Shown piece after piece: positions 23,394-63,999 of a DNA stretch of 64,000 nucleotides (the first letter of the stretch is position 1; each line of letters starts with the position of its first letter). Below the pieces are notes generated by a model. The model ran no database searches, had not been told where the DNA came from, and saw nothing but the letters and a program-made list of their open reading frames with translations. The translations under genes were made by a program, and so were the position numbers. The stretch is taken from IMG/VR virus record IMGVR_UViG_3300009181_000033, positions 124,001 to 188,000 of that record, one strand, 5' to 3'.

Positions 23394-23394
23394 A

Positions 23395-27690: not shown

Positions 27691-28232
27691 TGCCCTCTGT
27701 AAAATGCCATTGCAACAGTAGCTGCAGAACCAACGTTTAAAGATCTTACTGCTCCCCATTGCGGAATGTATACAACTTTGCTGGCTTTCTTGAGTGACTG
27801 CGGAGACACACCAATCGACTCCTGTCCGAGAATTAGAATCGTTTTCTTTGACCATGAATGTTCGTAAATGCTGGTTGCACCTGGTACATTGTCAAAGACG
27901 ACAACCTCGTGCTCAGGATGTTGTTCGATAACCTCATCAATTGATGGCGAAAAACCAAGATGTTCGTAGTTTTGCATCCCACATGCACCACGCCTATCCC
28001 ACTTCCTTCGACCAACGATGAACACCTTTTCGCAAAGGAAGGCATTTGATGATCTGATCACAGTTGAAATGTTAAAGTCGTTACCAAAATTCTCTGCAGC
28101 TACAACGAGCTCTGAACGATTCTTGTCCTGGTCAGCAATGATAGCCTCATGGTTCCAGTATTTGTAATGATCAACAACATTCCTGTGATCAAACGGCTCA
28201 GCTGGCCAATTGTGGTTGACGAGATTGCTCAT
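27681..28232 (-). CDS. TrmH/SpoU-family (SPOUT) RNA methyltransferase
   Basis: NISTVIRSS, LILGQESIG, IPQWGAVRSLNVGSAA. Confidence 0.9.
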   Translation of the reverse strand: MSNLVNHNWPAEPFDHRNVVDHYKYWNHEAIIADQDKNRSELVVAAENFGNDFNISTVIRSSNAFLCEKVFIVGRRKWDRRGACGMQNYEHLGFSPSIDEVIEQHPEHEVVVFDNVPGATSIYEHSWSKKTILILGQESIGVSPQSLKKASKVVYIPQWGAVRSLNVGSAATVAMAFYRGQWK

Positions 28233-28314
28233 GTAATAATAGTAAACAACTTAACAAGATATTTGCACTCACAAAAACAAATAACTCTTCTTGGATTATA
28301 GTTAATAATTGAGT

Positions 28315-29490: not shown

Positions 29491-29503
29491 ACAGGAGTGC
29501 AAA

Positions 29504-30823: not shown

Positions 30824-30859
30824 AAACCAAATATATATTTTATAATATCAAGAGGAACA

Positions 30860-34155: not shown

Positions 34156-34161
34156 TCAACC

Positions 34162-34764
34162 TCACTCAAAATCATATCCTACATCTATCTTTACTTTGAG
34201 ACTCGGAACCCTAATGTGGTTGGCTAAACCAATGTCCCTTGCTTCATCAGCATCAAGGTACCAATCGGCGTGTGATCTCTCATGAATTTGCTTAAGAAAA
34301 TATTCTGGATCCTTGCCGCAGTTCGCAGACATTTCCCTGTAGAGTGATTGATTAAGTCGATCTCCTTCCTTGGCATCAGCTTTAATTTCCTCAACCTTGC
34401 CTTTGGCACCGCTGGAAACATCGTGAATCATAATCGTTGCGTGTTTGTCAATAAAGCGATAGCCAGAGGAACCAAAACTAAAGAGCAGTGCCCCACAAGA
34501 CATTGCCTTGCCTTCAACTATTGTAGCGACAGGAAGCTTGGAAGCCTTTATGTTTGCAATCATGGACATGAGAGAATATACCTGCCCACCATAAGAATCT
34601 ATGACGACAGGAATGATGGACTGGCCAGTTGAGTGTGCCAAAGACATAGCATTTGAAAACTTGGCGGCCTCATCCTCATCAAATTTATTTACCCTAATCA
34701 CCACGGGCTCATAACGCAGCTTAACTTCGCTCAATCTCTTTGATATATCTTTAATTACGTTCAT
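34162..34764 (-). CDS. clpP: ClpP-like protease
   Basis: IDSYGG, AMSCG (Ser), IMIHD (His), DWYLDADEA. Confidence 0.85.
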   Translation of the reverse strand: MNVIKDISKRLSEVKLRYEPVVIRVNKFDEDEAAKFSNAMSLAHSTGQSIIPVVIDSYGGQVYSLMSMIANIKASKLPVATIVEGKAMSCGALLFSFGSSGYRFIDKHATIMIHDVSSGAKGKVEEIKADAKEGDRLNQSLYREMSANCGKDPEYFLKQIHERSHADWYLDADEARDIGLANHIRVPSLKVKIDVGYDFE

Positions 34765-34779
34765 TTTTTCCTTTATTTT

Positions 34780-35058
34780 CTAAGATAGAATCTTCGCTAT
34801 TAAATTTTTCTTAACCAAATCTGAAACTTCAAATGAGAACCATTGCTCTATGGTTTCGTCCCACGTGTGAATTGCACCTTTATCCGTTATTTCTTTTATC
34901 GTGCACTTGTGTTGTTGTTTCGTTCCATCAAGGTGTCGAACGATAATTAATTTCATTCCAACCTTGCCCAAAAAAGTTTGGGTCTCTTCTTCGAACAAAT
35001 CCTTCAAGGCTGAGAAAACTATTCTCTTGCCGACATGCTTCTTCTCTTCTTCACTCAT
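34780..35058 (-). CDS. Hypothetical protein
   Basis: 92-aa ORF overlapping the upstream stop. Confidence 0.55.
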   Translation of the reverse strand: MSEEEKKHVGKRIVFSALKDLFEEETQTFLGKVGMKLIIVRHLDGTKQQHKCTIKEITDKGAIHTWDETIEQWFSFEVSDLVKKNLIAKILS

Positions 35059-35464
35059 GCTTTTTTCTCCATTTGTAATAAAGCGTCAAGGCATGATCAT
35101 TTGGACACTTTTGTGGCATTGTTTGCCGACAAAATAATTCCCATGCATCAGCTGTATAATCACCAATCCCAGGTAAATCCCTTGCGCTTTTCCAATTGTT
35201 TTTAAGATAAGCCTTGGCCATCTTTATCAAATTTTCAGAACGCCTATTCTTAAACCCCAAAGAAGAAATGACTTCTCTCAATTCGCACTGATTCGCAGCC
35301 GCAAGTGATTCGGCATCAGGCCATTTTGAAAAAAGCATTGGAACAACTTTTTCAACCTGTTTTCTTGTGGTGCAATTTAAAAGCATGCAAGAAACAAGAA
35401 TCTTAAATTCATCAGGCCATAAATCTTCCTGAATTAAGCTGTAAGGTGATCGAGGAGGAATCAT
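35051..35464 (-). CDS. MBD4-like HhH-GPD DNA glycosylase (catalytic domain only)
   Basis: PPRSPYSLIQE, CMLLNCT, HhH LPGIGDYTAD (catalytic Asp), DHALTLY. Confidence 0.85.
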   Translation of the reverse strand: MIPPRSPYSLIQEDLWPDEFKILVSCMLLNCTTRKQVEKVVPMLFSKWPDAESLAAANQCELREVISSLGFKNRRSENLIKMAKAYLKNNWKSARDLPGIGDYTADAWELFCRQTMPQKCPNDHALTLYYKWRKKHE

Positions 35465-36514
35465 TCAATTTCCATTTAATAGCTTTGCAGCTTTCTTCAA
35501 ATCTTCGCTGTTTTTTATTGGTAAGAACCTAGTGTGCCTGGGGATTTCAACAAATGAAGTTTGAAATGTGTATGTTAGATCCTGCAAAAGCCTCTCATAG
35601 TGAACCACAAGGTTTCCATGCACGTTCTTTTTTACCCTGTGCCATGACCATTTTATTGTGTTAAAATCCAAATTTGCATCCACTATCATGCTATTTGTAT
35701 TCAGCCAATTAAATTGAATGGGATCATACTTCCCAAAAATCCTAAATTCTTCCACTATCTGATTAACCCCATCAACACTGCAAAGTATTCCACCGGAATC
35801 TGTTGGTATTTTTTCAACCACTTCACACGTGATGGGCTTTGCATTCTTTATGTGCCATCCAATCAAAAGAGGATCCAGCGAGGCCAGTACATTGCTTGCA
35901 TTAACAACACAGATATATTTGCCACCCTGTTTGATAAAATCATGAAGCAATCCAGATTCTTTTAAGGCAGGAACAACATCACCATGTCCACAAGAACTTA
36001 AATAAGGCTGTTGATTTCTTAGGCAAAGAAGATTATCAGGTGTTAATCCAATTGTCTGATATTGTTTAAAGGTTTTTATCTCTCCCTTAAAAGCCAAGGA
36101 AGAAAGATGGGATTTTATTTCCTCATCATTCGCAGGGTCTGTCATAATCCAAACATGGCGACTTGGCACCGATTGCATTATTTTCATTGCCAAAAGCGAA
36201 ATATTCAAATCAGGCAGCTTTTTTAGAGAATCAAAATTCCCTCCTGACAAAATACAATATGCAACCTGTCCATCCTCTATGGCCTTCAAGCCTAAATCAA
36301 AAATATCTTTTTCAATATCTTCGTATTTTGCAACATCATCTTGATGAACAACCACAGGATCATCGACCGAATAATCCTGTGGATTTGTCAACATCCTCAA
36401 TAATGATTGCAATCTCAAGCCATTGTCTCTGTCTATGGACTGAATTGTTTCAAATGAAACTTTTTCAAGTTGTAGCTGTAGGCTTTTCAAGAAACCTGGT
36501 GTGCGAGCGAACAT
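35465..36514 (-). CDS. UDPGP-family UTP--sugar-1-phosphate uridylyltransferase
   Basis: ILSGG, WIMT, CGHGDV, NVLASLDP, GGILC, NTNS, RFLPIK; the GTR loop looks shortened. Confidence 0.78.
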   Translation of the reverse strand: MFARTPGFLKSLQLQLEKVSFETIQSIDRDNGLRLQSLLRMLTNPQDYSVDDPVVVHQDDVAKYEDIEKDIFDLGLKAIEDGQVAYCILSGGNFDSLKKLPDLNISLLAMKIMQSVPSRHVWIMTDPANDEEIKSHLSSLAFKGEIKTFKQYQTIGLTPDNLLCLRNQQPYLSSCGHGDVVPALKESGLLHDFIKQGGKYICVVNASNVLASLDPLLIGWHIKNAKPITCEVVEKIPTDSGGILCSVDGVNQIVEEFRIFGKYDPIQFNWLNTNSMIVDANLDFNTIKWSWHRVKKNVHGNLVVHYERLLQDLTYTFQTSFVEIPRHTRFLPIKNSEDLKKAAKLLNGN

Positions 36515-49069: not shown

Positions 49070-49443
49070 GCTGATACACTGTACACTACATCCTTATACA
49101 GTGTATCAGCATGCTTCGCATATTCCTTATCTAATTCGGTTATCTGGTCTACATCCTTCGTGTAAACATCCAACACCACTTCATTCTCATTAATCGTTAT
49201 GGTGGCATTGTGCATCGTCTCATCTTCGTATTTTAAGAGAGATCTCACAAAATCATTTCTTAAATCTTGATTAAGAAATTGAAATTTCTTTCTGAGGCGG
49301 CGGGGCGACTCTATTTTTTCCCATTTGTTGACGGCCATAATGGGAACATCTTTTTCACGCGGCAAGACTGGCAGTGCCCCAAAATTCATTGGCCTCCTTG
49401 CTTTGTCGATAAACTCTTCGTGTAGACGAGAAAGCTGCTTCAT
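49066..49443 (-). CDS. Pterin-4a-carbinolamine dehydratase (PCD/DCoH)-like protein
   Basis: W...LRKKFQF...HNATITI...YTKDVDQITELDKEYA; catalytic histidines partly lost. Confidence 0.65.
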   Translation of the reverse strand: MKQLSRLHEEFIDKARRPMNFGALPVLPREKDVPIMAVNKWEKIESPRRLRKKFQFLNQDLRNDFVRSLLKYEDETMHNATITINENEVVLDVYTKDVDQITELDKEYAKHADTLYKDVVYSVSA

Positions 49444-50204
49444 AAAAGAACGTAACCTCCCACTACAGCTGCCTCAGTAAATGATGAGCCATTCGTCCAA
49501 ACGTTCCTGTTTCTATCTACGATGCAAGAGCCGCCTTTGAACTCCAGATCTCTCTCCTTGCCAACCCTATTCGAGACAACGACGTTCGCGTCTGTTTCTT
49601 CTGCTAGTTCAACCCATGATGAATCAGGATAGCCATAATCACTGCCCCAATTCGTCAATAGGGCTATTGTGTCGACAGAGCCATTTTTATAAAACCTCTG
49701 TTCATTCTTATAGAATTTATAACTATCTCTATAGTTGTTCATGACATCCCTACAAATCAACACACCTGTTCTTCCTGCTTTGGTGATTATAACAGGGTGC
49801 ATTGCCTCTGATGAAGTCGCCCATAAATTATCGGATCCCCACAGGTTGTGCTTCTGGCAATTCTCAACAAGGCCACTTGGTCCAACAATGGCAGCTGAAT
49901 TAAACAATTGATCTCCACGTTGTTCAACATAGCCAAAGACTATGTGGGTGTTAAATTTCTTTGCTATAGGGGCAAAAACTTCGGTTTGATAACCGTTTTT
50001 CTCCTGTGCACAAGAAGCTGCTTCTCTTTTGTTTTCCAAGACATAACCACTGATGCATAGTTCTGGAAGAACAACCAAACATGCGCCTTTAGCTGCAGCT
50101 TCGAAAGCCATTTGTTGTGCTGTTTTTAAATTTGCATATACGTCCAGGATCTTTGGCTGAAACTGGACTGCTGCAACGATAGGCGCATTTTGCATTTCAA
50201 TCAC
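49440..50204 (-). CDS. Carbon-nitrogen hydrolase (nitrilase superfamily)
   Basis: Triad LPEL, QKHNL, LICRD; SNRVG, FKGGS. Confidence 0.9.
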   Translation of the reverse strand: MIEMQNAPIVAAVQFQPKILDVYANLKTAQQMAFEAAAKGACLVVLPELCISGYVLENKREAASCAQEKNGYQTEVFAPIAKKFNTHIVFGYVEQRGDQLFNSAAIVGPSGLVENCQKHNLWGSDNLWATSSEAMHPVIITKAGRTGVLICRDVMNNYRDSYKFYKNEQRFYKNGSVDTIALLTNWGSDYGYPDSSWVELAEETDANVVVSNRVGKERDLEFKGGSCIVDRNRNVWTNGSSFTEAAVVGGYVLL

Positions 50205-53085: not shown

Positions 53086-53627
53086 GCGCTTCCCCCCATA
53101 GGACCTGCTGCCCCTGCTTTGGGAGCAATATTCTCATCTTCCATCTCAAAATTTGACTTACCGATCTCAATGTCATAAGAATCAAGCAAGTCAGCATTAA
53201 AAGATTCAACAACATCTTCTTCGTAATTTTTGGCTATATAATTACTGGCTCTTCTCAAGATTGTATTTCTCACCTCAAGAAGGGAATCGTAATTTTCTAC
53301 AAGCCTCATGACGTCAGAAACAAAAGAACGAATATCAATATCTTCAGCAGTTAATTTCTCAGGCTCTTCGTCCAGGACTTCGTCTTCATCATCAGCAGAT
53401 TCTTCGTCATCTTCAGCTTCGAACAACCTCCTGACTAGAGAACGAAAGTCACTCCCTTCTGTCTTGACATTCTTGGCCTCAGATTCATATGTGCTAAAAT
53501 ACTTGTCTATCTGGGCATCCAGAGAGTCTTCACCAGGCTCCATTTCTTCTTCCTTCGCTTCCCTTAAAAAGGAAGCAACTACACTACGAAGATAAAATTT
53601 TTTGCTTTTTTTTGAGTGAGTCATCAC
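53082..53627 (-). CDS. Acidic hypothetical protein with two tag copies
   Basis: YLRSVVASFLREA and FRSLVRRLFEA. Confidence 0.65.
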   Translation of the reverse strand: MMTHSKKSKKFYLRSVVASFLREAKEEEMEPGEDSLDAQIDKYFSTYESEAKNVKTEGSDFRSLVRRLFEAEDDEESADDEDEVLDEEPEKLTAEDIDIRSFVSDVMRLVENYDSLLEVRNTILRRASNYIAKNYEEDVVESFNADLLDSYDIEIGKSNFEMEDENIAPKAGAAGPMGGSA

Positions 53628-54385
53628 TTCACCACCTGAGCTATTTGTTCTGCCTTCTTAAATCTTTCTTCAATGGTTTCCCAATTAAATTCTCTCATTT
53701 GGGCAATAAGATAACTCTTTTTATCGTTGAGATAATCTCTATAGTAAGAATGCTCCCACATGTCGACAACAACTAATGGATAAAAGCCAACAGGGACATC
53801 ACCGCTATGATGACTAATCATAAAGTTGACATATTTTCTAAGGAACATGTGGTATCCTAAAACTGCCCAACCACTTCCAGCAGAAAGCGCACAGGCCATA
53901 AAATCACGCTGCCAATCATCAAAAGTACCAAAATCACGTTGTAGCCTAAGGTATGCGGTTGAATCCATTACAATTTCGCTATTTGGATCAAAACAATTAG
54001 CGAAATAAAGTTCATGTAACCAAGCAGCATTTAAGTTATAAACTTCATCAAGCTTAAGAGATCTATATGACGAATGTCTGGAATTGGTGTCAGATCTCTC
54101 TGCAGTATCAAGCTCAGAAGAAACCTTATTGAGACTCTCAACATATCCTTTGTAAAGATCAACGTGCGCACTCTTAGTCTTTTGTGAAACAAACTCAGAG
54201 ACTTGCTTGAATTGCTTTGGCTCATGAACGTATGATTCATTCAAATCAATTTTAGGCAAATTGGCAGTTACCTTTGTCATGTGAACATTCAATGTTTTTT
54301 TGATTATACCTTCAACGTCAACGTTGGCAAAGAGATTTTTATTATCAGTCAAGCTCATATTCGTCCTCCAGGGTGTCTTTATCAA
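53624..54385 (-). CDS. Fe/Mn superoxide dismutase-family protein with an N-terminal extension
   Basis: AH...YKGYV, LHELYF, FGTFDDW, GSGWAVL, DMWEHSYY. Confidence 0.85.
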   Translation of the reverse strand: MIKTPWRTNMSLTDNKNLFANVDVEGIIKKTLNVHMTKVTANLPKIDLNESYVHEPKQFKQVSEFVSQKTKSAHVDLYKGYVESLNKVSSELDTAERSDTNSRHSSYRSLKLDEVYNLNAAWLHELYFANCFDPNSEIVMDSTAYLRLQRDFGTFDDWQRDFMACALSAGSGWAVLGYHMFLRKYVNFMISHHSGDVPVGFYPLVVVDMWEHSYYRDYLNDKKSYLIAQMREFNWETIEERFKKAEQIAQVVK

Positions 54386-54626
54386 CCAAAAAATCGGTGC
54401 CCTCAGGCGTCTTCAATATAGCATCGCGAGGACCAACTGAAACAATCGTATAGAGAAATTGAGTCTTCTTGTGTCTCAACTTCAAATCCTTATCCAAGAC
54501 CTGTTCTTCTTTTCCATCGACCTTGGTTTTAAAAATGGCATCAACGCTCTCAGACAATGTTTTGAGTTTTGCATCCCACTCTTCTCTCATTATCCGGATG
54601 ATTTCAGATTCAGTAAGTTTTTTCAT
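54345..54626 (-). CDS. Hypothetical protein with N-terminal tag
   Basis: MKKLTESEIIRIMREE; ATATTTA and GGGAG upstream. Confidence 0.65.
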   Translation of the reverse strand: MKKLTESEIIRIMREEWDAKLKTLSESVDAIFKTKVDGKEEQVLDKDLKLRHKKTQFLYTIVSVGPRDAILKTPEGTDFLVDKDTLEDEYELD

Positions 54627-55057
54627 GTTTCTCCCTTAAATATTATGTCGGAGAATCTAATTACTTCAATACCGCAAGATTTAATCAATTCAATGCCTTC
54701 GGTGTTTCTATATTCATTTTCGTAAACAACCCTATGAATATTTGCATTGATAATTAATTTAGAACACTGTGGACATGGAGAGTGAGTCAAATACATCGTC
54801 TTCTCTTGGTTGAAGTTATAATCACATTTTATAAGCGAATTAACTTCAGCGTGAATAAATCCGCTCTGGCCAGGATCTAAAGAGTCTGGTTCATTGGGGC
54901 CTCCCCGATAATTTCCGTTATATCCTAAAGACAAAAGTCTAGTGTTGTCTTTGGAGACTATAATCGATCCTACTTTGAGTCTTGGATCATAAGATCGATC
55001 AGCGACAGTACGAGCAATGCTCATCCATGTTTCATCCCAAGAAGGTCTTCTACTCAT
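54623..55057 (-). CDS. dCMP deaminase
   Basis: RPSWDE, LGYNG, HAEVN, SPCPQC. Confidence 0.93.
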   Translation of the reverse strand: MSRRPSWDETWMSIARTVADRSYDPRLKVGSIIVSKDNTRLLSLGYNGNYRGGPNEPDSLDPGQSGFIHAEVNSLIKCDYNFNQEKTMYLTHSPCPQCSKLIINANIHRVVYENEYRNTEGIELIKSCGIEVIRFSDIIFKGET

Positions 55058-55058
55058 A

Positions 55059-55637
55059 TTAATTTCCATATGTTTTTTGTCTATTGTCAACATAAAGATA
55101 GTGACTATAGCACCTGGGTTCATACAATTCTGAGCCACCCACCTCTATTTCATCACCACCCGTCTGTTTTTTATGAGTATAGTGTGCATCTCTTCCACAC
55201 ACAGTGCAAACAGCCGTGCACTTCTCAAGACTTGTTGCCCAAACAGACATTTTTTCTATCTCTTCAAATGGCTTACCAGTCGCAGACATCTCAAGAGATG
55301 AGACTACAATAGTAAACCCATTCTTATATAACCACACCAAAGACTCGGCTATTCCTGGAATCATGAATGCTTCATCTACTGCAATCACCTGAGGGTTGTC
55401 CGGAGAATTGGCAAGATGCTCAAGAAGATCAACTCCCGTCTTTACACGAACGGCAGGCAACTTCCATCCAGCATGTGTGACAATTTCTCCTTCGCCATAC
55501 CGGTCATCCATAGAAGGCTTAAAAGCTACAACTTTCTTGTGTTGGTACTTGTATCTCTCAAGGGCTGAGAGTAGCCTCGAGGTCTTCGAGGAAAACATGG
55601 GACCGGTATAGACTATGAATTCGGGATTGTTTGACAT
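55059..55637 (-). CDS. tdk: Thymidine kinase
   Basis: GPMFSSKTS, VDEAF, CTVC, VGGSELYEPRC. Confidence 0.9.
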   Translation of the reverse strand: MSNNPEFIVYTGPMFSSKTSRLLSALERYKYQHKKVVAFKPSMDDRYGEGEIVTHAGWKLPAVRVKTGVDLLEHLANSPDNPQVIAVDEAFMIPGIAESLVWLYKNGFTIVVSSLEMSATGKPFEEIEKMSVWATSLEKCTAVCTVCGRDAHYTHKKQTGGDEIEVGGSELYEPRCYSHYLYVDNRQKTYGN

Positions 55638-55638
55638 A

Positions 55639-56595
55639 TCACATTTCCTTTAGACGGTGCCAGTTGGATAAGTACCAATCTATCGTCTGATCAAGTCCAT
55701 TCCAAAAGTCCATCACAGGCTCATATCCTATAACGTTTTTCGACTTTCTTATACACGCATGAGTATGCATAATATCACCCGGGCGCCATGGAGCAACATG
55801 ATGTTTGGCGTCAGGAAACCTACTCAAGAGATAGTCTAGAATTTCTTTATTGGAATAACTTAAGCCACATGCAACGTTAAATGCTTCACCTTTCAGTTGA
55901 TTTTCTGCAAGGGCAGCCTTGATGCAAGCTTCAACGACATTGTCGACGTGACACATGTCTCTTGTTTGGGAGCCATCACCATCAGATCTCATCGAATTTC
56001 CTGACATAATGGCAGTTAACCACGCAGACACAGCTGTTGAATAAGGGGAGCCACCGAGCTGATTATTCCCGAAGACATTAAAGAATCTCATGCAAGCAGA
56101 GTCCAAGCCGTAGAGTTTCGAATAAAGCCCAAGGTATTGTTCTATCAATAATTTCTGTAGTCCATATGGTGACTCCGGAACTGTATTTGCTCTTTCATCT
56201 GTTGGCAATAAATCTACTTGTCCATATACGGCTGATGAAGAAGCAAAGATAAACCTCTTGATGTTTCCCTTGCAAGCGTCAATTAGCTCAAGACTCTTGG
56301 TGACATTCGTATCATTGGTTTTAATGGGTTGCTCTACGGAATAGGAAACTCGAGGATTGGCCGCGAGGTGGAACACATAATCGTATTTTCCATCTCTTAT
56401 TCTTTTTAATATACGTGGAGAAGAAAAATCAGAAACTATCAAATTTTCTGATTCGATTGCAAATGGAATGAAAGTCAAATTTCCATTTGACATATCATCC
56501 ACCATGTCAACTTCCCAATTGTCATTAATCAACTTTAAAGAGAGGTTGCTTCCAATGAAACCACAGCCACCAGTCACCAATGCTCTTTTATTCAT
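55639..56595 (-). CDS. NAD-dependent NDP-sugar epimerase/dehydratase (WbpP/GalE-like)
   Basis: TGGCGFIGS, FHLAA, SSSAVYG, YGLQK, RFFNVFG, GDGSQTRD. Confidence 0.92.
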   Translation of the reverse strand: MNKRALVTGGCGFIGSNLSLKLINDNWEVDMVDDMSNGNLTFIPFAIESENLIVSDFSSPRILKRIRDGKYDYVFHLAANPRVSYSVEQPIKTNDTNVTKSLELIDACKGNIKRFIFASSSAVYGQVDLLPTDERANTVPESPYGLQKLLIEQYLGLYSKLYGLDSACMRFFNVFGNNQLGGSPYSTAVSAWLTAIMSGNSMRSDGDGSQTRDMCHVDNVVEACIKAALAENQLKGEAFNVACGLSYSNKEILDYLLSRFPDAKHHVAPWRPGDIMHTHACIRKSKNVIGYEPVMDFWNGLDQTIDWYLSNWHRLKEM

Positions 56596-56601: not shown

Positions 56602-57612
56602 TCATTTCTTAAAATAATGATAACCCTTAAAAAGGGTGCCTTCCAAAATAAGATTTGAAAGATTCTTGTCATTCAACTTGATGGCCCTGTGCGAAGCCAA
56701 AATTTTGCACCAATCATTCCAGTATGGGTCGTTGGCTTCAAAATGCTTTGCCGTGTTGCCCAAAGCAATCAACAGTTGTTTGTTTGTCTTTGCCTTTCGG
56801 AAATTTGTCTCCACAATTGAAAGGCCGACAGTTGGAACTTCACTTGGGAGCTCTGGCATTTCCTCGGGCAGTTCGTGCCTAAACTTCCAAGAATCATCAA
56901 TGATCTTTTCAACCATCCCGAAGTGTCTCTCGTAAATGTGAAGAGAACCACTTGTGTGAATATAGTCGCCAAGACCAATCGGTCTTCCTAGTTCCTTCGT
57001 TAATTGAATCGCCAATAGTTCCTGGAACAAGGTAAAGGCAGGGACATCATAGGCCAACCCAAGGATTAAATCAGAAGAACGCATGGTTGTGACCATGTGC
57101 ACCTTATCTTTCCTGAGGAAAAACTGGAGGGACAAGGTGCAAGGCACATCAAGGTTGGCATAAATCGAATCCTTAGGTGACCTGATATGAATTATTGCAC
57201 GCCTTGAATCAGGATCTTTCTTGAGCTCATCTACGACATACTTCCACTGAGACCAATCCTCAGAAACATCGCCTGCAATCCTGTCGTGTGGTCTGAATAT
57301 TCTTGCGCCGTATGCACTGTTCGCAGTCTTGCCGTCATCTGAAATCTTTGACCAGAATGTCGAATAGTTTGAAATCCAACTCGTTGAATCATTTGCGCTA
57401 AAATACCACAGCAGCTCAGCAATCATATAGTGAATGGAAAAATCCCTCTCCTTCACATAAGGAATTCTATTCCTCGGGTTCGTGATCTTAAACTGATAGG
57501 CGATGCTCTCCTTGATTCCTAGTCCGCGAGGAGAAGAAGAATACTCAGGATTTTCATAAACATCCTTGAGGATGTCAAGGTAAGCATCGGTGAAATTGTC
57601 GTAAGTTCTCAT
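56602..57612 (-). CDS. Thymidylate-synthase-family enzyme, probably a dCMP hydroxymethylase/methylase
   Basis: DSRRA, VPCT, MRSSD, GLAYDV (Asp at the base-specificity position), SLHIY. Confidence 0.85.
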   Translation of the reverse strand: MRTYDNFTDAYLDILKDVYENPEYSSSPRGLGIKESIAYQFKITNPRNRIPYVKERDFSIHYMIAELLWYFSANDSTSWISNYSTFWSKISDDGKTANSAYGARIFRPHDRIAGDVSEDWSQWKYVVDELKKDPDSRRAIIHIRSPKDSIYANLDVPCTLSLQFFLRKDKVHMVTTMRSSDLILGLAYDVPAFTLFQELLAIQLTKELGRPIGLGDYIHTSGSLHIYERHFGMVEKIIDDSWKFRHELPEEMPELPSEVPTVGLSIVETNFRKAKTNKQLLIALGNTAKHFEANDPYWNDWCKILASHRAIKLNDKNLSNLILEGTLFKGYHYFKK

Positions 57613-57613: not shown

Positions 57614-58279
57614 TTATTTTCCCGTCAAGAGATGGTAGGAGTCAATGAAATTCTGCCACTTGTCGTGGTTCTGACAGGTCGAAGAATAAACAGATAAATT
57701 AACCTGTTGCTTTGAATAGATCGGTTTAATGAAAAACTCTGTGATGGTCAGGATGTCAATAAGCAGCTCATTCTCAACATCAGAAGCCCTGAACACCAAT
57801 CGAGGAGAGTCCTTGAAATAATGTATCAGATTGAGGCACGTCACATCTTGAGGTGACAACATCTCACTGTCAGAATATTCTGTGAATGGATTTGCAAACC
57901 GAACAACACATCGACGTGTGTCTGGTTTCTTCGTAAGATGTTTCTTTATCTCTTCCAACAAGAATGTGTAATTGACATTGTTGTGTTTTTCACAAGCCAC
58001 CGTATAAATGGTTGACCTGAGAGAAGGTAGTTTCGTCAAGGATCGAAGACTAGGTCTTGATTCGGAAAATTCAGCAAAAACACTCGGCTTAATGTTGTGA
58101 CTTGCGAAGGCATTTCTTTTTGTGTCATAATAGGCTGCCACATCAGGAGATAAATTCTTAAGTCTCCTGATCGCCTCATCTCCCAAGGGAAGATTAGTCA
58201 CATCAAGACGAATGAGATAATCATCATTTTCGAATTCTGGCTTCTTTACTGTAATCATTTTTTCATCCATCAAAATCAC
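57614..58279 (-). CDS. Second, divergent thymidylate-synthase-fold protein
   Basis: PDTRRC, DVTCL, FRASD, LLIDI; lacks the HxY motif. Confidence 0.6.
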   Translation of the reverse strand: MILMDEKMITVKKPEFENDDYLIRLDVTNLPLGDEAIRRLKNLSPDVAAYYDTKRNAFASHNIKPSVFAEFSESRPSLRSLTKLPSLRSTIYTVACEKHNNVNYTFLLEEIKKHLTKKPDTRRCVVRFANPFTEYSDSEMLSPQDVTCLNLIHYFKDSPRLVFRASDVENELLIDILTITEFFIKPIYSKQQVNLSVYSSTCQNHDKWQNFIDSYHLLTGK

Positions 58280-60029
58280 AGAGAAAGAGGTAAGGTAGTT
58301 CGAGGTTCATTTCCTGAGCCTTGTCAAATTCAAACTTAAAGCTATCAAGAACACTGTCAATTGCGTAAACAATCGGACGACCGTGGGCATTGAAGCTAGT
58401 GTTAATTAGCGCCTTAGATTTCGGATAGATCTTGGAGAGCACCTCGAACATAAATGTATCGTTCGATGTTACTCTCTGGGGGCGACCTGACCAAACCTCT
58501 CTGTTAGGATATTTATGTGCAATGCCTCCATAGTTCTCAAGATCAGGATTTAAATAGTTATAGGTCAGGATCATATACTTGTCTGAGCCTACCACTCTCT
58601 TTGAAATGTCTTTGTCAAAGAATTCATCAATCGCTGAATCCAACATAACAGGGGCCATAGGCATAACGGTGTCTCTCTCATTTAGATCATTGATGATCAT
58701 AACGTTAGTTGTCGTTGGAATGGAAAGAGTGGTCGTGCTGCAAAGAGCCCGAGGGCCAAATTCCATCCTGGACTTGACAACGTTGACAAGTTTGTTCCTG
58801 GAGACCAAATCGACCGTATCATCAATCGCTGTTGATCTTTGGTTGGAAGAATAATGCCTAATATGACTACCGTATTTCTTTAAATCACTTGGAGAAATAC
58901 AACTATCCCAATCAGCGAACTCTGGTCGAGGGCCCCACTTAAGGTCTCCCCATTTAAATCCGCCAACAAAAGCCTCGTACATTCCCATTCCGCAACCCTG
59001 GTCACCTGCCAGGGGGACAACTGAAAACACTCCGGAAGTAGAATTTAGAACCTTGTTGTTGAGCTTCACATTGTAGAAAATTCCACCAGAAAGAGCCACG
59101 TGTTTCATGTTGTTGGCACTGACGATCTTCGCCAGGACACCTTCAATCACCTCTTGAATGTAATGACCAATTGCGATCCTAACATCACGACCAGTGATGC
59201 TCGGGGCCACCTTGGATAGAACGTCGGCGTAATGCTCATTCCATGACTGCTTTACAGTCTTGAGATAATCGATGTTGGCGAGGCCGTCAGTCTTCCAATT
59301 CTCCGGACGACCATCTGGTTTCGCCTGCATTGTATCGAACATCTCTTGAGACTTCTTTACAGCAAGGCTCCGGAGCAAATCAATTTGTGTTGAATCCAAT
59401 AGCTGTGAAACATGTGTCTCATAGCCAAGGAACTTATACTCATCCTGGTTCTCCTTCATCCCACAGAAGGAGGTCGCAAACTGATACATCAGGCCAAGTG
59501 AATACTGATATCCGTAATATCTGTTGACCAGCTGGGGAACTGTGCCGAGAGAATCGGTGCTATAGACACTAATGACTTCCTGTGAATTGCCAAATCCATC
59601 TGCAGCGATGATGTGAAACTTATCATAACTTACAACCTGAGATGAATGTTTAGAAACATCCCACTGATCTCTCATGAAGGAAAGAGCTGACATGGCATGT
59701 GCGTCGTGATGAGTGAAGTCCTCGCCCAAGTGAACTGTCTTTAGAGAATATTTGACCACGAGAGAATCAAAGTGTTGCTTGTCAAAGTACTTGCTGGTCT
59801 CTGTGTGGAAATCAAACTTATCGAACCAATGAGAAACAAAAATATAGCTGCCTGGCTCGATCTTAACGTGCTTCTCGATCTCATCCAAAGAAAGACGAGG
59901 ATATGCGCTGGAAGATTTAATGCGATTGATTCGCTCCTCTTCATAACCGATGACAGTCTTGTCACCATCGAAATAAACAGCAGAAGAGTTGTGCCCGAGA
60001 GTAATCATTAATGCAGACTTTTTGTTCAT
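58263..60029 (-). CDS. NodU/CmcH-family O-carbamoyltransferase
   Basis: GHNSSA, EEERINRIK, HHDAHA, DGFG, SLGLMY, EYKFLG, GDQG, EFGPRAL, MPMAP, NTSFNAHG. Confidence 0.93.
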   Translation of the reverse strand: MNKKSALMITLGHNSSAVYFDGDKTVIGYEEERINRIKSSSAYPRLSLDEIEKHVKIEPGSYIFVSHWFDKFDFHTETSKYFDKQHFDSLVVKYSLKTVHLGEDFTHHDAHAMSALSFMRDQWDVSKHSSQVVSYDKFHIIAADGFGNSQEVISVYSTDSLGTVPQLVNRYYGYQYSLGLMYQFATSFCGMKENQDEYKFLGYETHVSQLLDSTQIDLLRSLAVKKSQEMFDTMQAKPDGRPENWKTDGLANIDYLKTVKQSWNEHYADVLSKVAPSITGRDVRIAIGHYIQEVIEGVLAKIVSANNMKHVALSGGIFYNVKLNNKVLNSTSGVFSVVPLAGDQGCGMGMYEAFVGGFKWGDLKWGPRPEFADWDSCISPSDLKKYGSHIRHYSSNQRSTAIDDTVDLVSRNKLVNVVKSRMEFGPRALCSTTTLSIPTTTNVMIINDLNERDTVMPMAPVMLDSAIDEFFDKDISKRVVGSDKYMILTYNYLNPDLENYGGIAHKYPNREVWSGRPQRVTSNDTFMFEVLSKIYPKSKALINTSFNAHGRPIVYAIDSVLDSFKFEFDKAQEMNLELPYLFLCDFDG

Positions 60030-60094: not shown

Positions 60095-60574
60095 TTATTT
60101 TCGCCTTTTGTATTCAGAAATAACGAATTCCAAATTCTGTTCGTTGGGCTCAATGATGAATTTGTCAATATTCAAAGTGGGATAGATCTCACGATATGCC
60201 ACCTTCACCTTTTCATTCTGTTCCTTCGTAACTGTCTCTTCCCTGCCAATCCAAGGTCGATTGAGCTCGAGCAAGATCATGAAGTACCCTAGATCAGAGA
60301 ATTTGCTCTCAATTTTGTCCTTGATTTCTGTGGTGATGTTGTTTCTCGAAAAGACCTTGCCATAGGACAGCTCGGAAATGTAAGAGCGATCGAAAACAAA
60401 CGGTCCACCTCGCTGGTCGATATCAACGAAATATCCGTTGAAATAATCATAATCCTTGGCAGCCGGTCCGTAATGAATCACCTCAATCCCTAGGCGCTCC
60501 TGCAGCTTCTTGCAGAAAGTCGTCTTGCCCTGCTGTTCAGCTCCCTCAACAATAATTCCACCTGTCTTCATCAT
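60095..60574 (-). CDS. Thymidylate-kinase-like dNMP kinase
   Basis: IVEGAEQQGKTT P-loop, FDRSYISELSYG. Confidence 0.8.
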   Translation of the reverse strand: MMKTGGIIVEGAEQQGKTTFCKKLQERLGIEVIHYGPAAKDYDYFNGYFVDIDQRGGPFVFDRSYISELSYGKVFSRNNITTEIKDKIESKFSDLGYFMILLELNRPWIGREETVTKEQNEKVKVAYREIYPTLNIDKFIIEPNEQNLEFVISEYKRRK

Positions 60575-63500
60575 TCCTCCTCTAGGATCTTAATCTTGCT
60601 CATGAAGGTTTTGCACCCGTAAGAATCAATGGTGATCTCAGAGATACAAACCGAATATTCCGGGAACTCCTTCTTCCCATCCCATCCCCAACAAAACACT
60701 CTCTTTAGCTGTCCAGATGGGCCAGAAGCATCCAGAATCAAATAAGGCTTGCCATTCTTCGTTTCTTTTTTCTTGGCATTAAGAACGACAAACCAGCAAA
60801 TGTCGCTGGCCTCGATCTCGTCAATCGGCCTGATGTTTTTCTCGTTGAATTTCCTCAAGATGTAATCGGGAACAAGGGAGATTGGGTTGAATGTGCTGAG
60901 GAACTTCGTGCAGTTACTGACGAACTCTTTTCTCGTCCAATCTTCCATGTCCTCAGTCGAGAGAAGGAGGTCCCTGAAGGCCTCCATTCCAGCAAATGGA
61001 TTCTTCTTGGTCGACTTCTTAATATCGTTGCTCTTGTTAATCAGGATCTCGTGCATCTGTTTGTAGCTACTAAAGGTCTTGCCAGGACCAACGGAGTCGA
61101 GAGAATCGAAAGCCTTGATTGAAATCAGGGCCTCGAGGCCTCGCTTATTAAACTTGGAGTGCCTCCACGTGCCATCCTCTGTCCAGAGGAGTTGTTCAAT
61201 TGACTCGTAAGGTCGATTCTCGATAATCTCCTCGATAGCCGATGAACCGACGCCTTTGCAGGAAAGGAAACTCGGCATGAATCTCTTTCCGTCGAGGATT
61301 GTCCATGAGGCTGTGGCGTGATTGATGTCAATGGGAACAATCTTATATCCAAGGGCCTTAACCTCAGAGAAAGCCTTTGTTCGTTTGTCATCGCTGTCCG
61401 ACATGGACTCGAGATAAGCACAGAGCCACTCCTCCTCGAAGTAAGTCAGGAGCCATGCACAATAGTAGGAATCGATAGCGTAAGAGAAGGCATGTGCAGA
61501 ATTAAAGCCGTAACCGGCGAAGAACAAAATCTTTTCATAAAGATCGTCTGCAACTTTTTCAGGCACTCCGTTCTTAATGGCCCCAGCGACAAAGTCCACC
61601 TTCGTTTTCTTGGCTTCCTCAACACCCTTCGCACCATCCTTGGCAGTCGTCTTCTTCATGATGTTTCGTCGGATGGTGTCCGTCTCTGTCTCAGGGAAAC
61701 CAGCCACAACAGAGCACAATTTCATTACCGATTCCTGGAAAATGATGCAACCAAAGCTTGGCTCGAGAACCTGCTTGATCAGTGGATGCTGATAATCGAT
61801 CTTGTCAGGATTTGCCTTGGCGTCCAAATACAACTTGTCGACGTTTGCGGCCAAGGGACCGGGACGATAGATTGAAGTCAATGTTGCAATGTCGAGGATG
61901 CTCCTCGGCTTTGCCTTCATGAATAGTCTCTGTGCACCGGCGTTGGCGAGCTGGAAGATGCCGGCGAATCGACCTTCGTGGTACACGTACTCATAGACCT
62001 TCTGGTCGTTTAGGTCGATGTTCTTCGGATCCATGTGCTTATCAAACCAAGCACGAACCTGTGCGAAAGTCGGATTCTCGATACCTTCACGGCGCTGGAG
62101 GATGAGCGAAATGCATCGCTCAATAATCCTCAAGGTTTCAAGGCCAAGGAGGTCGAACTTAATCCAACCGAGCTCCTCAAGGTGCTTGGCAGCCATGCCT
62201 TCGGCCCATGGAGTCTGAGGCTCGCCCCTCGCAAGAATCAGAGGCATCCTTTCTGCGATGTTTTCAGAAACAATGACTCCTCCAGCATGGCGACCCAAGG
62301 ACCTGTTCTGTCGAAAGAGAATCTTGATGGGATCGGCAACCTCGGGATGAGCCGCAATGAAGTTCTGGAGGGACTTCGAATATTGAATGGCGTCCTCGTA
62401 AGAGAGGACGAAGCTGTTCTTGTCATGTCCTGGCTTGAAGATGACCTTTTTGACATCATCCTCGATCGGTGCCATGGCAGCGTTGACCTCCTCGAATGGA
62501 ATTCCATAGAACTTAGAAATGTCCTTGATGAGGCTCTTCAGCTTGAAGGTGTTGTAATTGGAGATCGGAATGACATTCTCGTTGCCAAAGTTCTTTCGGA
62601 GCAACTCAATCAACCTGTCTCGGTCGGAGATATCACTATCGATATCAGGGAATCCTGAATTGTGTGTCAGCGTCCAATTTGTTCCTGATGTAGAAACCCA
62701 AAAAGTGTGATCTTCATCAACTTCAATGTCAATCAAATTGACATCATTCTCATGATCAATGATCTCGATCTTGTTGATCTTTGTAGGCTCTTGTTGAACA
62801 AAGAAATTATCCATTGGCAGTATGTGCTGTGCTTGAACTTCAATTTGTTTGCCTTCCCTTAGGACTAACCAAATATGATTTGGTGAACATTCGAAAATAT
62901 TAGAGCTCACATGAAGTCTGTATGTTTTCTTAGAGTTAGAATTAAATTTCTTTTTGATTTTTCGAGGAACTAAAGAACCCCCAACAACAACATCACCTTC
63001 AACTAGCTCTTCGATTTTTTTATGCCCGCTCGGTGTTTTCACCAAAGTCCCAGGCAAAAGACATCGATGGGGATTCATGAATCTCTCGAAAGGAAGATCA
63101 TATTCGATAGGATCGAGGTTGGTAATGCCAAGGACGTATGCAACGAGAGCACCAGCAGCAGAGCCACGACCAGGACCAATCAACATGTTTTCCCTGGCGA
63201 TGTCGAGAATCTTTTTCATGGTCAAGAAGTAATTGGAGAACTTCTTGTCCTTGATGATCTTCAGCTCGTACTTGAGTCGATCGATGTATTCCTGCTTGTC
63301 CTCCAAACCTCGCCAAACAAGACCCTTCTTGCAAGCCTCGACTAGAGCCTTGTCTTCAGTTAGTCCCTCAGGAATGGCATAGGAAGGCAGCTTCATGGAT
63401 CGATCAGGGTGTGCCTCCTGCAGCTCATTATGAACGATGTCGTGTGTCCTCTCGATTGCATCACAAACAATCGTATCATCATAGAAGGACATTCCTTCTG

Positions 63501-63999
63501 TTGTCTTACGATAGGTGTCCCAAAGCTGTGTGGCATTCTTGGGATAAAGCTCACACTTTAGATCTTCTACGGTTTGAGGAAGATCCTTGGGATTGAAACT
63601 CTGATAGTTCAACCACCCAAGCTTCTTATAGATCTCCCTCTCCCGCCAGTGCTCAGGTCGAGAATAGTGAGAGTCACAAGTGACAACAAGGCGGTCAGTC
63701 AAGGAATTTCGCTTGGCAAATTCGATGATCGCGCGGTTGGCAAGGTGCTGCGCTGACAGCTTGTTAAACTGAATCTCGAGACAGACGTTTTCCTTACCAA
63801 CCGCATCAGAGAGTCGATCGTAGGTGTTGCCCATGGAATTGAGCACCTTTTCCATGAGAGACTGATCGTTGAGCAAGTCATGCTTCAGATCATCGAATGG
63901 AATCTTCTGGAGCTGCTCAAAGATATCGTAACAAAGTGGGCCACCAAGGCATGCTGTGCTCACCATAAGGTGGCCACCCTTGGCAGCTTCCTTCAACAT
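60571..63999 (-). CDS. dnaE: DNA polymerase III alpha subunit (5' end outside the window) containing an intein
   Basis: TACLGG, DSHY, GPGRGSAAG, FERF, PDIDSD, GRHAGG, KFDLLGL, GYGFNSAHA. Confidence 0.96.
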   Translation of the reverse strand: MLKEAAKGGHLMVSTACLGGPLCYDIFEQLQKIPFDDLKHDLLNDQSLMEKVLNSMGNTYDRLSDAVGKENVCLEIQFNKLSAQHLANRAIIEFAKRNSLTDRLVVTCDSHYSRPEHWREREIYKKLGWLNYQSFNPKDLPQTVEDLKCELYPKNATQLWDTYRKTTEGMSFYDDTIVCDAIERTHDIVHNELQEAHPDRSMKLPSYAIPEGLTEDKALVEACKKGLVWRGLEDKQEYIDRLKYELKIIKDKKFSNYFLTMKKILDIARENMLIGPGRGSAAGALVAYVLGITNLDPIEYDLPFERFMNPHRCLLPGTLVKTPSGHKKIEELVEGDVVVGGSLVPRKIKKKFNSNSKKTYRLHVSSNIFECSPNHIWLVLREGKQIEVQAQHILPMDNFFVQQEPTKINKIEIIDHENDVNLIDIEVDEDHTFWVSTSGTNWTLTHNSGFPDIDSDISDRDRLIELLRKNFGNENVIPISNYNTFKLKSLIKDISKFYGIPFEEVNAAMAPIEDDVKKVIFKPGHDKNSFVLSYEDAIQYSKSLQNFIAAHPEVADPIKILFRQNRSLGRHAGGVIVSENIAERMPLILARGEPQTPWAEGMAAKHLEELGWIKFDLLGLETLRIIERCISLILQRREGIENPTFAQVRAWFDKHMDPKNIDLNDQKVYEYVYHEGRFAGIFQLANAGAQRLFMKAKPRSILDIATLTSIYRPGPLAANVDKLYLDAKANPDKIDYQHPLIKQVLEPSFGCIIFQESVMKLCSVVAGFPETETDTIRRNIMKKTTAKDGAKGVEEAKKTKVDFVAGAIKNGVPEKVADDLYEKILFFAGYGFNSAHAFSYAIDSYYCAWLLTYFEEEWLCAYLESMSDSDDKRTKAFSEVKALGYKIVPIDINHATASWTILDGKRFMPSFLSCKGVGSSAIEEIIENRPYESIEQLLWTEDGTWRHSKFNKRGLEALISIKAFDSLDSVGPGKTFSSYKQMHEILINKSNDIKKSTKKNPFAGMEAFRDLLLSTEDMEDWTRKEFVSNCTKFLSTFNPISLVPDYILRKFNEKNIRPIDEIEASDICWFVVLNAKKKETKNGKPYLILDASGPSGQLKRVFCWGWDGKKEFPEYSVCISEITIDSYGCKTFMSKIKILEEE
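62659..63063 (-). mobile_element. Mini-intein (135 aa, no homing endonuclease)
   Basis: Starts CLLPGTLV, block B CSPNH, ends DIEVDEDHTF...LTHN/S; removal restores FMNPHR-SGFPDID. Confidence 0.92.

What the first reader, a model, noticed from the sequence alone, without database searches (positions are those of the whole stretch)
57614..58279. Unrecognised truncated thymidylate-synthase paralog between the carbamoyltransferase and the TS
Seen: this 221-aa protein keeps TS core motifs in order (DTRR, catalytic-position Cys in DVTC, RASD, then Asp eight residues later) but lacks HxY and much of the usual N-terminal region. Inference: it is either a heterodimer partner of the neighbouring TS, since TS active sites are built from both subunits, or a folate-independent C5-activating enzyme with new chemistry.
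Basis: partly seen in the sequence, partly recalled or inferred. Interest (0 to 1): 0.7.

Follow-up and report, generated by a model that had tools for sequence, protein, structure and literature searches.

The report
Hidden thymidylate-synthase-fold enzyme in phage DNA-modification cluster
A small, unannotated protein in a jumbo phage has the thymidylate-synthase fold with a remodelled active site, and it always sits beside the enzymes that turn cytosine into 5-hydroxymethyl- and 5-carbamoyloxymethyl-cytosine, so it is probably an unrecognised step in phage DNA hypermodification.

Summary

Across 78 homologs it keeps the catalytic Cys, the Arg pair, R166, Y94 and the two hydroxymethylase marks (L143D, N177D). 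It has replaced the residues tied to folate chemistry or sugar binding (E58 to an invariant Lys, G173 to Glu, HxY to TxQ) and lacks the C-terminal tail.

The family is almost entirely viral: no match in cultured phages and one small metagenome-assembled contig among 185,579 prokaryote genomes. Every locus with at least 3 kb of upstream sequence also carries a homolog of the 5hmC carbamoyltransferase of Yang et al. 2021 and an NMP-type kinase. Most also carry a canonical dCMP hydroxymethylase.

Of 68 non-redundant phage carbamoyltransferase loci, 20 carry this protein, 19 carry a different second TS paralog, and 24 carry only the hydroxymethylase.

My best reading, which is inferred, is a folate-independent Cys-C6 enzyme that works on the C5 side chain of 5hm- or 5cm-dCMP. 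The heterodimer idea remains untested. It is a new variant of a known kind.

The parts
57614..58279 (-). The finding: a divergent TS-fold protein ('small TS'). The longest ORF is 221 aa; the likely start is ATG 58258 (214 aa).
   Evidence: ORF and translation. No Pfam or PHROG hit. AF2 pLDDT 92.9. TS fold. 55 + 93 homolog clusters. dN/dS 0.054 in the one unsaturated pair.
56602..57612 (-). Canonical dCMP hydroxymethylase (MilA-like, 336 aa with a C-terminal extension), starting 1 nt after the small TS stop.
   Evidence: PF00303 E 1.5e-31. Best PDB sequence hit is MilA, E 9e-42. Signature E58, Y94, L143D, C146, R166, S167, D169, G173, N177D, H207, Y209. It is the only PF00303 match in the genome.
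58263..60029 (-). NodU/TobZ-type O-carbamoyltransferase, a homolog of the 5hmC carbamoyltransferase.
   Evidence: Carbam_trans_C 5.5e-23 and Carbam_trans_N 2.2e-11. PHROG 1601 E 5e-58. By eye it shares the motifs of the enzyme assayed by Yang et al. (sequence against the consensus); this was not computed.
60095..60574 (-). Small P-loop NMP-kinase-like protein (159 aa). A kinase of this or the AAA_28 type is found in 20/20 small-TS loci.
   Evidence: Weak AAA_28 and thymidylate-kinase hits. PHROG 761, E 9e-9. Kinase HMM tally.
55639..56595 (-). Nucleotide-sugar 4-epimerase (extended SDR). Among carbamoyltransferase loci it occurs almost only in the small-TS class.
   Evidence: Epimerase 1e-47. 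Best PDB hits 6dnt, WbgU and WbpP. Cluster 14: 8/20 small-TS, 1/19 A3, 0/24 single.
55059..55637 (-). Thymidine kinase.
   Evidence: PF00265 E 8e-38.
54623..55138 (-). dCMP deaminase.
   Evidence: PF00383 E 3.8e-21; PHROG 174 E 1.4e-51.
60571..63999 (-). DNA polymerase III alpha-type replicase heading the co-directional gene string. It runs off the window end.
   Evidence: DNA_pol3_alpha 7e-52, finger domain, HHH_6 and a Hint match. Same position in relatives.

Best explanation
The gene encodes an active, highly diverged member of the thymidylate-synthase fold that belongs to the phage pathway converting dCMP to 5-hydroxymethyl- and 5-carbamoyloxymethyl-cytosine DNA. Shown: it has the whole TS fold. 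It keeps the parts that hold a pyrimidine 5'-monophosphate (R164 = R166; R122/R123 = R126'/R127', which in TS come from the partner subunit). It keeps the covalent nucleophile (C148 = C146), the C5 proton-handling Tyr (Y92 = Y94), the cytosine-selecting Asp (D175 at N177) and the hydroxymethylase-type Asp at L143 (D145). It has lost or replaced several residues that serve other roles in TS and the hydroxymethylases. Two are tied to methylene-tetrahydrofolate chemistry: E58 is an invariant Lys54 and G173 is Glu171. The C-terminal tail is also gone. Other active-site positions differ too: H147 is Leu, Q165 is Phe, HxY is TxQ, and the R21 loop is an acidic E-N-D-D loop. Inferred: it does not use folate. 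Cys148 adds to C6 of a dCMP that already carries a C5 side chain, either 5hm-dCMP from the neighbouring hydroxymethylase or 5cm-dCMP after carbamoylation. This re-forms the exocyclic-methylene intermediate by expelling the C7 leaving group, and carbamate is a much better leaving group than hydroxide. A new nucleophile is then installed, or the side chain is otherwise edited, with K54 and E171 acting on the substituent. The product is then phosphorylated by the adjacent NMP kinase and built into DNA by the phage polymerase. The nucleotide level, the substrate and the product are all inference.
Against: No biochemical datum exists for any member. D167 (= D169, the pterin-binding Asp) is kept in 71/78, which would also fit a retained pterin-type cofactor. 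The N-terminal residue mapping (K54 = E58, acidic loop = R21 loop) rests on low-confidence columns of one hhalign alignment, and I could not inspect model coordinates. Yang et al. showed that the carbamoyltransferase alone makes 5cmC, and 24 of 68 carbamoyltransferase loci have no second TS-fold gene, so the protein is not needed for carbamoylation itself. Loss of the R21-type arginine weakens the case for a plain 5'-monophosphate substrate. The nucleophile and the product are unknown.
Confidence: 0.4

Rival explanations
1. It is a structural or regulatory partner rather than an autonomous enzyme. It would form a TS-type heterodimer with the neighbouring dCMP hydroxymethylase (each lending its Arg pair to the other's site), or it would hold 5hm-dCMP and hand it to the kinase or carbamoyltransferase, as in a small nucleotide-channelling complex.
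For: TS enzymes are obligate dimers whose sites use R126'/R127' from the partner, and the Arg pair is kept here. The gene abuts or overlaps the hydroxymethylase gene in the window and in many loci (L003, L008, L009, L011, L013, L030, L032, L034). It overlaps the kinase gene in L032. The Atlas lists viral kinase-TS fusions.
Against: Keeping the nucleophilic Cys, Y94, L143D and N177D at 90-100% across sequences only 21-30% identical is not expected of a mere scaffold. In L001-type loci two epimerase genes separate it from the hydroxymethylase, and L012 and L060 show no hydroxymethylase within reach. Gene overlaps are common in phages. The complex prediction gave no answer and counts neither way.
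Confidence: 0.2
2. It is an independent C5-functionalising enzyme that starts from plain dCMP with a non-folate cofactor, as the flavin-dependent 5-hydroxy-dCMP synthases (AfhB, RB69 gp48) do. This would give the phage a second kind of modified cytosine, which the carbamoyltransferase or a glycosyltransferase then decorates.
Against: The diagnostic D169N is not present: Asp in 71/78. The AfhB match is no better than MilA or T4 dCH. Making two different pre-replicative cytosine replacements beside a canonical hydroxymethylase would be unusual. No flavin-binding evidence is obtainable here.
Confidence: 0.2
3. It is a conventional folate-dependent hydroxymethylase or methylase paralog with a different substrate, for example CMP, dUMP or a di- or triphosphate.
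For: D169, Y94, L143D and N177D are kept. The R-A-x-D form of the R166 motif is also seen in the CMP-preferring MilA (alignment). The carbamoyltransferase also accepts ribo-5hmC.
Against: E58 is replaced by Lys in 78/78 and G173 by Glu or Asp in 77/78. The C-terminal tail is absent. There is no PF00303 signal at all. All canonical hydroxymethylases in these loci keep E58 and G173 without exception.
Confidence: 0.1
4. It is a decaying duplicate of the hydroxymethylase with no function.
For: Very low identity to any TS (about 12-15%).
Against: The length is conserved at 200-230 aa in 93 clusters (50% identity level). Twenty-seven columns are invariant among the 34 closer homologs, synteny is conserved and dN/dS is 0.054.
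Confidence: 0.02

Closest known systems
dCMP/CMP hydroxymethylases of the TS superfamily (T4 gp42 dCH; MilA)
   Different: There is no PF00303 match. E58 is Lys, G173 is Glu, H147 is Leu, Q165 is Phe, HxY is TxQ, the R21 loop is acidic and the C-terminal tail is missing. A canonical hydroxymethylase already sits next door.
Flavin-dependent 5-hydroxy-dCMP synthases (phage HY126 AfhB, RB69 gp48, DLP3 gp80)
   Different: They are defined by D169N, whereas this family keeps Asp (71/78). There is no sequence-level similarity in PDB searches. The gene context here is a carbamoyltransferase, not arabinosyl- or glycosyltransferases.
5hmC carbamoyltransferase clusters found by MetaGPA (Yang et al., eLife 2021, PMC8670742)
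   Same: A NodU/TobZ-type carbamoyltransferase lies next to an Asp177 TS homolog and a dCMP deaminase in uncultured phages. That is the arrangement reported to give 5-carbamoyloxymethylcytosine.
   Different: That study was built on Pfam domains, and the passages I read never mention this Pfam-invisible protein. Here it is present in 20 of 68 such loci, and a different second TS paralog is present in 19 more.
Thymidine hypermodification (5-HMUDK kinase plus aGPT-Pplase; known from Lee et al. 2018 and PMC8989533, recalled from my own knowledge, not read here)
   Same: The proposed logic is the same: a C5-hydroxymethyl group is activated with a good leaving group and then displaced by a new nucleophile.
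   Different: That pathway acts on 5hmU in DNA, uses phosphate or pyrophosphate as the leaving group, and uses unrelated enzyme folds. The parallel is an analogy for the inferred mechanism only.

Membership tests
Thymidylate synthase / dCMP hydroxymethylase superfamily (TS fold) | Overall TS alpha/beta fold | tested here: met
Thymidylate synthase / dCMP hydroxymethylase superfamily (TS fold) | Match to Pfam PF00303 above the gathering score | tested here: not met
   No Pfam family at E <= 0.1 and no PHROG. Homology is visible only by profile-profile comparison, E 3e-6.
Thymidylate synthase / dCMP hydroxymethylase superfamily (TS fold) | Catalytic Cys (C146), Arg pair (R126/R127), R166 and Tyr94 | tested here: met
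   C148 76/78, R122 69/78, R123 71/78, R164 76/78, Y92 78/78. Mapping.
Thymidylate synthase / dCMP hydroxymethylase superfamily (TS fold) | Glu58 and Gly173 (folate activation and pterin packing) | tested here: not met
   K54 in 78/78 aligns with E58, and E171 (74/78) stands at G173. The N-terminal mapping has low alignment confidence.
Thymidylate synthase / dCMP hydroxymethylase superfamily (TS fold) | His207-x-Tyr209 sugar-binding motif and the R21 phosphate loop | tested here: not met
   T201-x-Q203 stands in that place, judged from the spacing before the following helix. R24 is not conserved across the wider family, and a conserved E17-N18-D19 acidic loop stands where the SSPRG loop aligns.
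Thymidylate synthase / dCMP hydroxymethylase superfamily (TS fold) | Obligate dimer with shared active sites | tested here: inconclusive
   Only a heterodimer with the neighbour was tried, and the tool returned 'no answer'. A homodimer was not tested.
Folate-dependent dCMP hydroxymethylase (T4 gp42 / MilA type) | Asp at N177 (cytosine) and Asp/Glu at L143 (water access) | tested here: met
   D175 76/78 and D145 70/78. Criteria as stated in PMC13326640.
Folate-dependent dCMP hydroxymethylase (T4 gp42 / MilA type) | Use of 5,10-methylene-tetrahydrofolate | not testable with these tools
   Only indirect evidence is available: E58 and G173 are lost and the C-terminal tail is missing, but D169 is retained.
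5-hydroxy-dCMP synthase (AfhB / RB69 gp48 type) | Asn in place of Asp169 (D169N) | tested here: not met
   D167 is Asp in 71/78. The signature is defined. By contrast the A3 paralog family shows N at this site in 17 of the 20 sequences tabulated.
5-hydroxy-dCMP synthase (AfhB / RB69 gp48 type) | Bound flavin cofactor | not testable with these tools
   No ligand-aware test was available.
Phage 5hmC carbamoylation gene cluster (Yang et al. 2021) | Carbamoyltransferase (N and C domains) co-located with an Asp177 TS homolog | tested here: met
   for the window. 20/20 small-TS loci carry the carbamoyltransferase, and 18/20 also carry the hydroxymethylase within reach.

The most novel reading that the evidence does not exclude
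The carbamoyl group is not the final mark in these phages but an activating leaving group. This TS-fold enzyme would use Cys-C6 addition to expel carbamate from 5-carbamoyloxymethyl-dCMP and capture the exocyclic methylene with a new nucleophile, such as ammonia released from the carbamate or an amine or amino acid. That would give a so far unknown C5-aminomethyl-type cytosine, which the ATP-grasp ligase found only in this class could extend further. It would be the first folate-free 'methylene transferase' of the TS fold and a cytosine counterpart of thymidine hypermodification.
Probability: 0.2. Interest if true: 0.85.

Novelty: new variant of a known kind. Interest (0 to 1): 0.62.

Why it matters
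Phage DNA hypermodification enzymes provide tools for epigenome sequencing and explain how phages escape restriction and CRISPR. The TS fold was recently shown to support folate-free chemistry, namely flavin-dependent hydroxylation. This family would be another remodelled branch.

It is invisible to Pfam-based surveys such as MetaGPA, yet it is present in roughly 30% of phage carbamoyltransferase clusters. A different second TS paralog fills the same slot in another 28%. The end product of many 'carbamoyltransferase' phages may therefore not be the 5-carbamoyloxymethylcytosine that was made in vitro.

The finding gives a concrete, clonable candidate of about 214 aa and clear residues to mutate (C148, K54, E171).

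Tried and rejected
1. Sequence-only recognition failed. Pfam and PHROGs gave no hit. PDB phmmer and hmmsearch with one sequence, 34 sequences and 78 sequences gave nothing significant. The best were an irrelevant StySJI M hit and a MilA hit at E about 2.

2. hhalign of the 34-sequence alignment against the hydroxymethylases was weak (probability 38%). Only the 78-sequence profile reached 88%.

3. A heterodimer prediction of the hydroxymethylase with the small TS (complex prediction) gave the verdict 'no answer', score 0.00. It is not evidence for or against binding.

4. I searched for cultured relatives. Megablast of the region and tblastn of the protein against 50,697 phage records found nothing. 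Only carbamoyltransferase homologs appear in cultured phages.

5. The scan of 185,579 prokaryote genomes gave one 3-kb MAG contig with the same phage-like gene order. The 78-sequence alignment was too diverse to serve as a pattern query.

6. I looked for informative domain fusions in longer family members and found none.

7. I considered that the protein is the phage's real thymidylate synthase. I rejected this because it has Asp at N177 and ThyX is present elsewhere in the genome.

8. I considered that it is a 5hodCMP synthase. This is not supported, because D169 is not Asn.

9. I did not compare the published carbamoyltransferase sequence computationally, because that would have required pasting a long sequence. 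The motif likeness was judged by eye only.

10. Model coordinates are not exposed, so I could not measure the positions of K54, E171 and the acidic loop relative to the nucleotide site.

Full report
**What is there**

The window is part of a complete 297,894-bp virus record with direct terminal repeats, that is, a jumbo phage. On the minus strand, a tightly packed, co-directional string of genes runs in this order:
- a DNA polymerase III alpha-type replicase (60571..63999)
- a 159-aa P-loop NMP-kinase-like protein (60095..60574)
- a NodU/TobZ-type carbamoyltransferase (58263..60029)
- the 221-aa ORF of the finding (57614..58279)
- a 336-aa TS homolog (56602..57612)
- a nucleotide-sugar 4-epimerase (55639..56595)
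- thymidine kinase (55059..55637)
- dCMP deaminase (54623..55138)

Gaps between the genes from the carbamoyltransferase through thymidine kinase are 1-6 nt.

The ORF starts at a GTG, but homologs begin where its Met8 lies. ATG 58258 (214 aa) is therefore the likelier start, 4 nt past the carbamoyltransferase stop. The hydroxymethylase ATG follows the small protein's TAA after a single base.

**Checking the observation**

Pfam, PHROGs and PDB sequence searches see nothing. The resemblance to TS is nevertheless not chance:
- BLASTP against the neighbouring TS homolog gives E 1e-4 and aligns DTRR/DSRR, DVTC/DVPC and RASD/RSSD.
- A 78-sequence profile aligns to a profile of the hydroxymethylases with E 3e-6 (probability 88%) over 195 columns.

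The model aligns from residue 1 of T4 dCH and of E. coli ThyA to about residue 230-236. The protein is therefore a complete, compact TS domain. Its N-terminal half has diverged beyond sequence recognition, and the C-terminal tail is what is missing. 'Truncated at the N-terminus' is not correct.

**A real, conserved, virus-only family**

The 90%-identity database holds 55 clusters. The exhaustive search of 50%-identity representatives holds 93, most of them between about 185 and 270 aa with a minority of shorter fragments. Synonymous sites are saturated in most pairs while pN stays at 0.15-0.38. The one unsaturated pair gives dN/dS 0.054. No cultured phage has the protein. Among 185,579 prokaryote species genomes, the only match is a 3-kb MAG contig with the phage gene order carbamoyltransferase-kinase-UDG-small TS.

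**Active-site anatomy**

The residue mapping uses the neighbour as a bridge to TS numbering. Counts are from 78 sequences down to 21% identity.

Residues that are kept:

| This protein | TS equivalent | Conservation |
|---|---|---|
| C148 | C146 | 76/78 |
| Y92 | Y94 | 78/78 |
| R122 / R123 | R126 / R127 | 69 and 71 of 78 |
| R164 | R166 | 76/78 |
| D167 | D169 | 71/78 |
| D145 | L143 | 70/78 |
| D175 | N177 | 76/78 |

Asp at N177 selects cytosine. An acidic residue at L143 marks products other than methyl (PMC8670742; PMC13326640).

Residues that are changed:
- E58 is Lys54 in 78/78.
- G173 is Glu171 in 74/78.
- H147 is Leu.
- Q165 is Phe.
- S167 is Ala in 76/78, as in MilA.
- H207-x-Y209 is T201-x-Q203 (placed from the spacing before the following helix).
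- A conserved E17-N18-D19 acidic loop aligns where the R21 phosphate loop is. This last alignment has low confidence.

Only two short outliers lack the catalytic set. By contrast, every canonical hydroxymethylase in about 80 related loci keeps E58, G173, D169, H207 and Y209.

This pattern keeps covalent C6 chemistry and cytosine recognition and discards what handles methylene-tetrahydrofolate. It is the basis for calling the protein an active but folate-independent enzyme. D169 retention is the main counter-indication.

**Genomic company**

In all 15 loci first recovered with the protein, at 37-96% identity, a carbamoyltransferase lies within 3 kb upstream. The same holds for the most distant members at 28-32% identity, where the order is carbamoyltransferase, UDG-like protein, AAA_28 kinase, small TS, hydroxymethylase. 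Only contigs too short to tell are exceptions.

Searching the other way, I classified 68 non-redundant phage carbamoyltransferase loci from IMG/VR and assemblies:
- 20 carry the small TS.
- 19 carry a different second TS paralog ('A3', 247-297 aa).
- 24 carry only a hydroxymethylase-type TS.
- 5 carry no TS-type gene, and some of these are cut off by contig ends.

A3 is clearly TS-like (hhalign 99.8% to the hydroxymethylases), but it has lost E58 (to M/L/I) and G173 (to L/M/N) and usually has D169N.

A P-loop kinase accompanies 20/20 small-TS loci, 19/19 A3 loci and 11/24 single-TS loci. The sugar epimerase (8/20) and an ATP-grasp ligase (6/20) occur essentially only in the small-TS class.

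On a maximum-likelihood tree of the carbamoyltransferases, the A3 class is one clade (100/99). The small-TS loci form at least two groups within the same well-supported 50-row clade. The basal clades have a single TS. The two kinds of second TS-fold gene are thus mutually exclusive occupants of one slot in related clusters. That argues for a real role tied to this pathway.

**What the neighbours do**

The 336-aa neighbour is closest to MilA (E 9e-42). It has the full dCMP-hydroxymethylase signature and is the only PF00303 match in the genome. The phage makes dTMP with ThyX.

The carbamoyltransferase shares the characteristic motifs of the enzyme that Yang et al. showed to convert 5hmC to 5-carbamoyloxymethylcytosine, with carbamoyl phosphate and ATP, on ssDNA, RNA and free 5hmdCTP (against the consensus). 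This comparison was by eye. That work was Pfam-based, and the passages I read do not mention this protein. No later paper in the library mentions 5cmdC or a second TS-fold component.

**Most likely mechanism (inferred)**

Both ordinary TS-fold jobs, dTMP and 5hm-dCMP synthesis, are already filled. The protein keeps everything needed to bind a cytosine mononucleotide and attack C6, while the folate-handling residues are replaced by an invariant Lys and Glu that should face the C5 substituent.

The most coherent reading is therefore an enzyme that works on the C5 side chain of 5hm-dCMP or 5cm-dCMP. Cys148 adds to C6. The C7 leaving group departs, and carbamate is far better than hydroxide. The exocyclic methylene common to all TS-family reactions is re-formed and captured by another nucleophile. 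The product goes to the adjacent kinase and polymerase.

I put about 0.4 on this family of mechanisms. Of that, about 0.2 is for the specific 'carbamate as leaving group' version.

The rivals are:
- a non-catalytic or heterodimeric partner of the hydroxymethylase (0.2);
- an independent non-folate C5 enzyme on dCMP, in the manner of the flavin-dependent 5-hydroxy-dCMP synthases (0.2; the D169N mark is absent);
- a conventional folate-dependent paralog with another substrate (0.1);
- a decaying duplicate (0.02).

The only complex prediction I could run, hydroxymethylase with small TS, returned 'no answer' and is not used as evidence.

**Comparison with what is known, and novelty**

By fold and catalytic core it belongs to the TS superfamily. 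It fails the Pfam model and several family-defining residues (E58, G173, HxY). It also fails the D169N criterion of the 5hodCMP synthases. I therefore file it as a new, divergent family within a known fold, a new variant of a known kind, and not as a member of any characterised subfamily.

It matters because it suggests that many phages carrying the 5hmC carbamoyltransferase make something more than, or other than, 5cmC. It is also a small, tractable candidate for new nucleotide chemistry.

Noticed in passing
L023:10454-11215, L021:10373-11206, L105:8468-9274 (Bacteroides phage BF503P1) and 16 further loci: A second, unrelated-looking TS paralog family ('A3', 247-297 aa) occupies the slot after carbamoyltransferase and kinase in 19 of 68 loci. 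It has lost E58 and G173 and mostly carries D169N, the published mark of 5-hydroxy-dCMP synthases, yet it sits beside a canonical hydroxymethylase. Cultured Bacteroides fragilis phages carry it, annotated as a second 'deoxycytidylate 5-hydroxymethyltransferase'.
   Followed up: partly
L044:7213-7998, L046, L048, L049, L075, L101: A lineage of carbamoyltransferase loci nested among the small-TS loci has a single TS homolog directly upstream of the carbamoyltransferase. Its signature is unusual: E58Q, D169E, and Y209 replaced by K, E or R (kept as Y in L075).
   Followed up: no
L012:8691-10007, L022:10146-11420: Fusion proteins of an AAA_28/dNK-type kinase with a UDG-superfamily domain lie between the carbamoyltransferase and the small TS. 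Separate UDG-like genes are found in 10/20 small-TS loci, 0/19 A3 loci and 1/24 single-TS loci. The window's own genome has no UDG match.
   Followed up: partly
L001:6946-8235 and equivalents in L002, L003, L005-L008: An ATP-grasp ligase (ATPgrasp_Ter, about 425 aa) is inserted between the kinase and the carbamoyltransferase. It occurs only in small-TS loci (6/20) and is absent from the window. It could extend the modification or make carbamoyl phosphate.
   Followed up: no
window 60571-63999 (-): The Pol III alpha-type replicase has a weak Hint-domain match at residues 313-350 that splits the polymerase domain, suggesting an intein. The relatives' polymerases differ in length (1152-1211 aa).
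   Followed up: no
window 28309-32794 (+): A complete DUF444 (YeaH-like), SpoVR, PrkA gene trio, with very strong Pfam scores, is carried by the phage. This is a bacterial stress or sporulation-associated module and is unusual as phage cargo.
   Followed up: no
window 21726-27855 (-): This stretch holds a GroEL-type chaperonin, a UvdE UV endonuclease, an AAA ATPase, an Fpg/Nei-type DNA glycosylase and a GDSL-like hydrolase in a row, which is a notable DNA-repair and chaperone load for a phage.
   Followed up: no
window 32851-36514 (-) and 7967-8848 (+): The window holds a GT2 glycosyltransferase fused to a methyltransferase domain, a ClpP protease, a UTP-glucose-1-phosphate uridylyltransferase and an RmlD-like reductase. 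Together with the epimerase in the cluster, these hint at phage-made nucleotide sugars, possibly for DNA glycosylation.
   Followed up: no
window 53624-54385 (-) and 49440-50204 (-): A SOD-like protein (Sod_Fe_C) and a carbon-nitrogen hydrolase (nitrilase/N-carbamoyl amidase superfamily) are conserved in synteny downstream of the cluster in the closer relatives (L001, L004-L006). Given the carbamoyl chemistry nearby, the hydrolase may be worth a look.
   Followed up: no
window 10046-11635 (-): A phage-encoded protein carries GAF and PAS sensor domains with a histidine-kinase-type HATPase_c ATPase domain.
   Followed up: no
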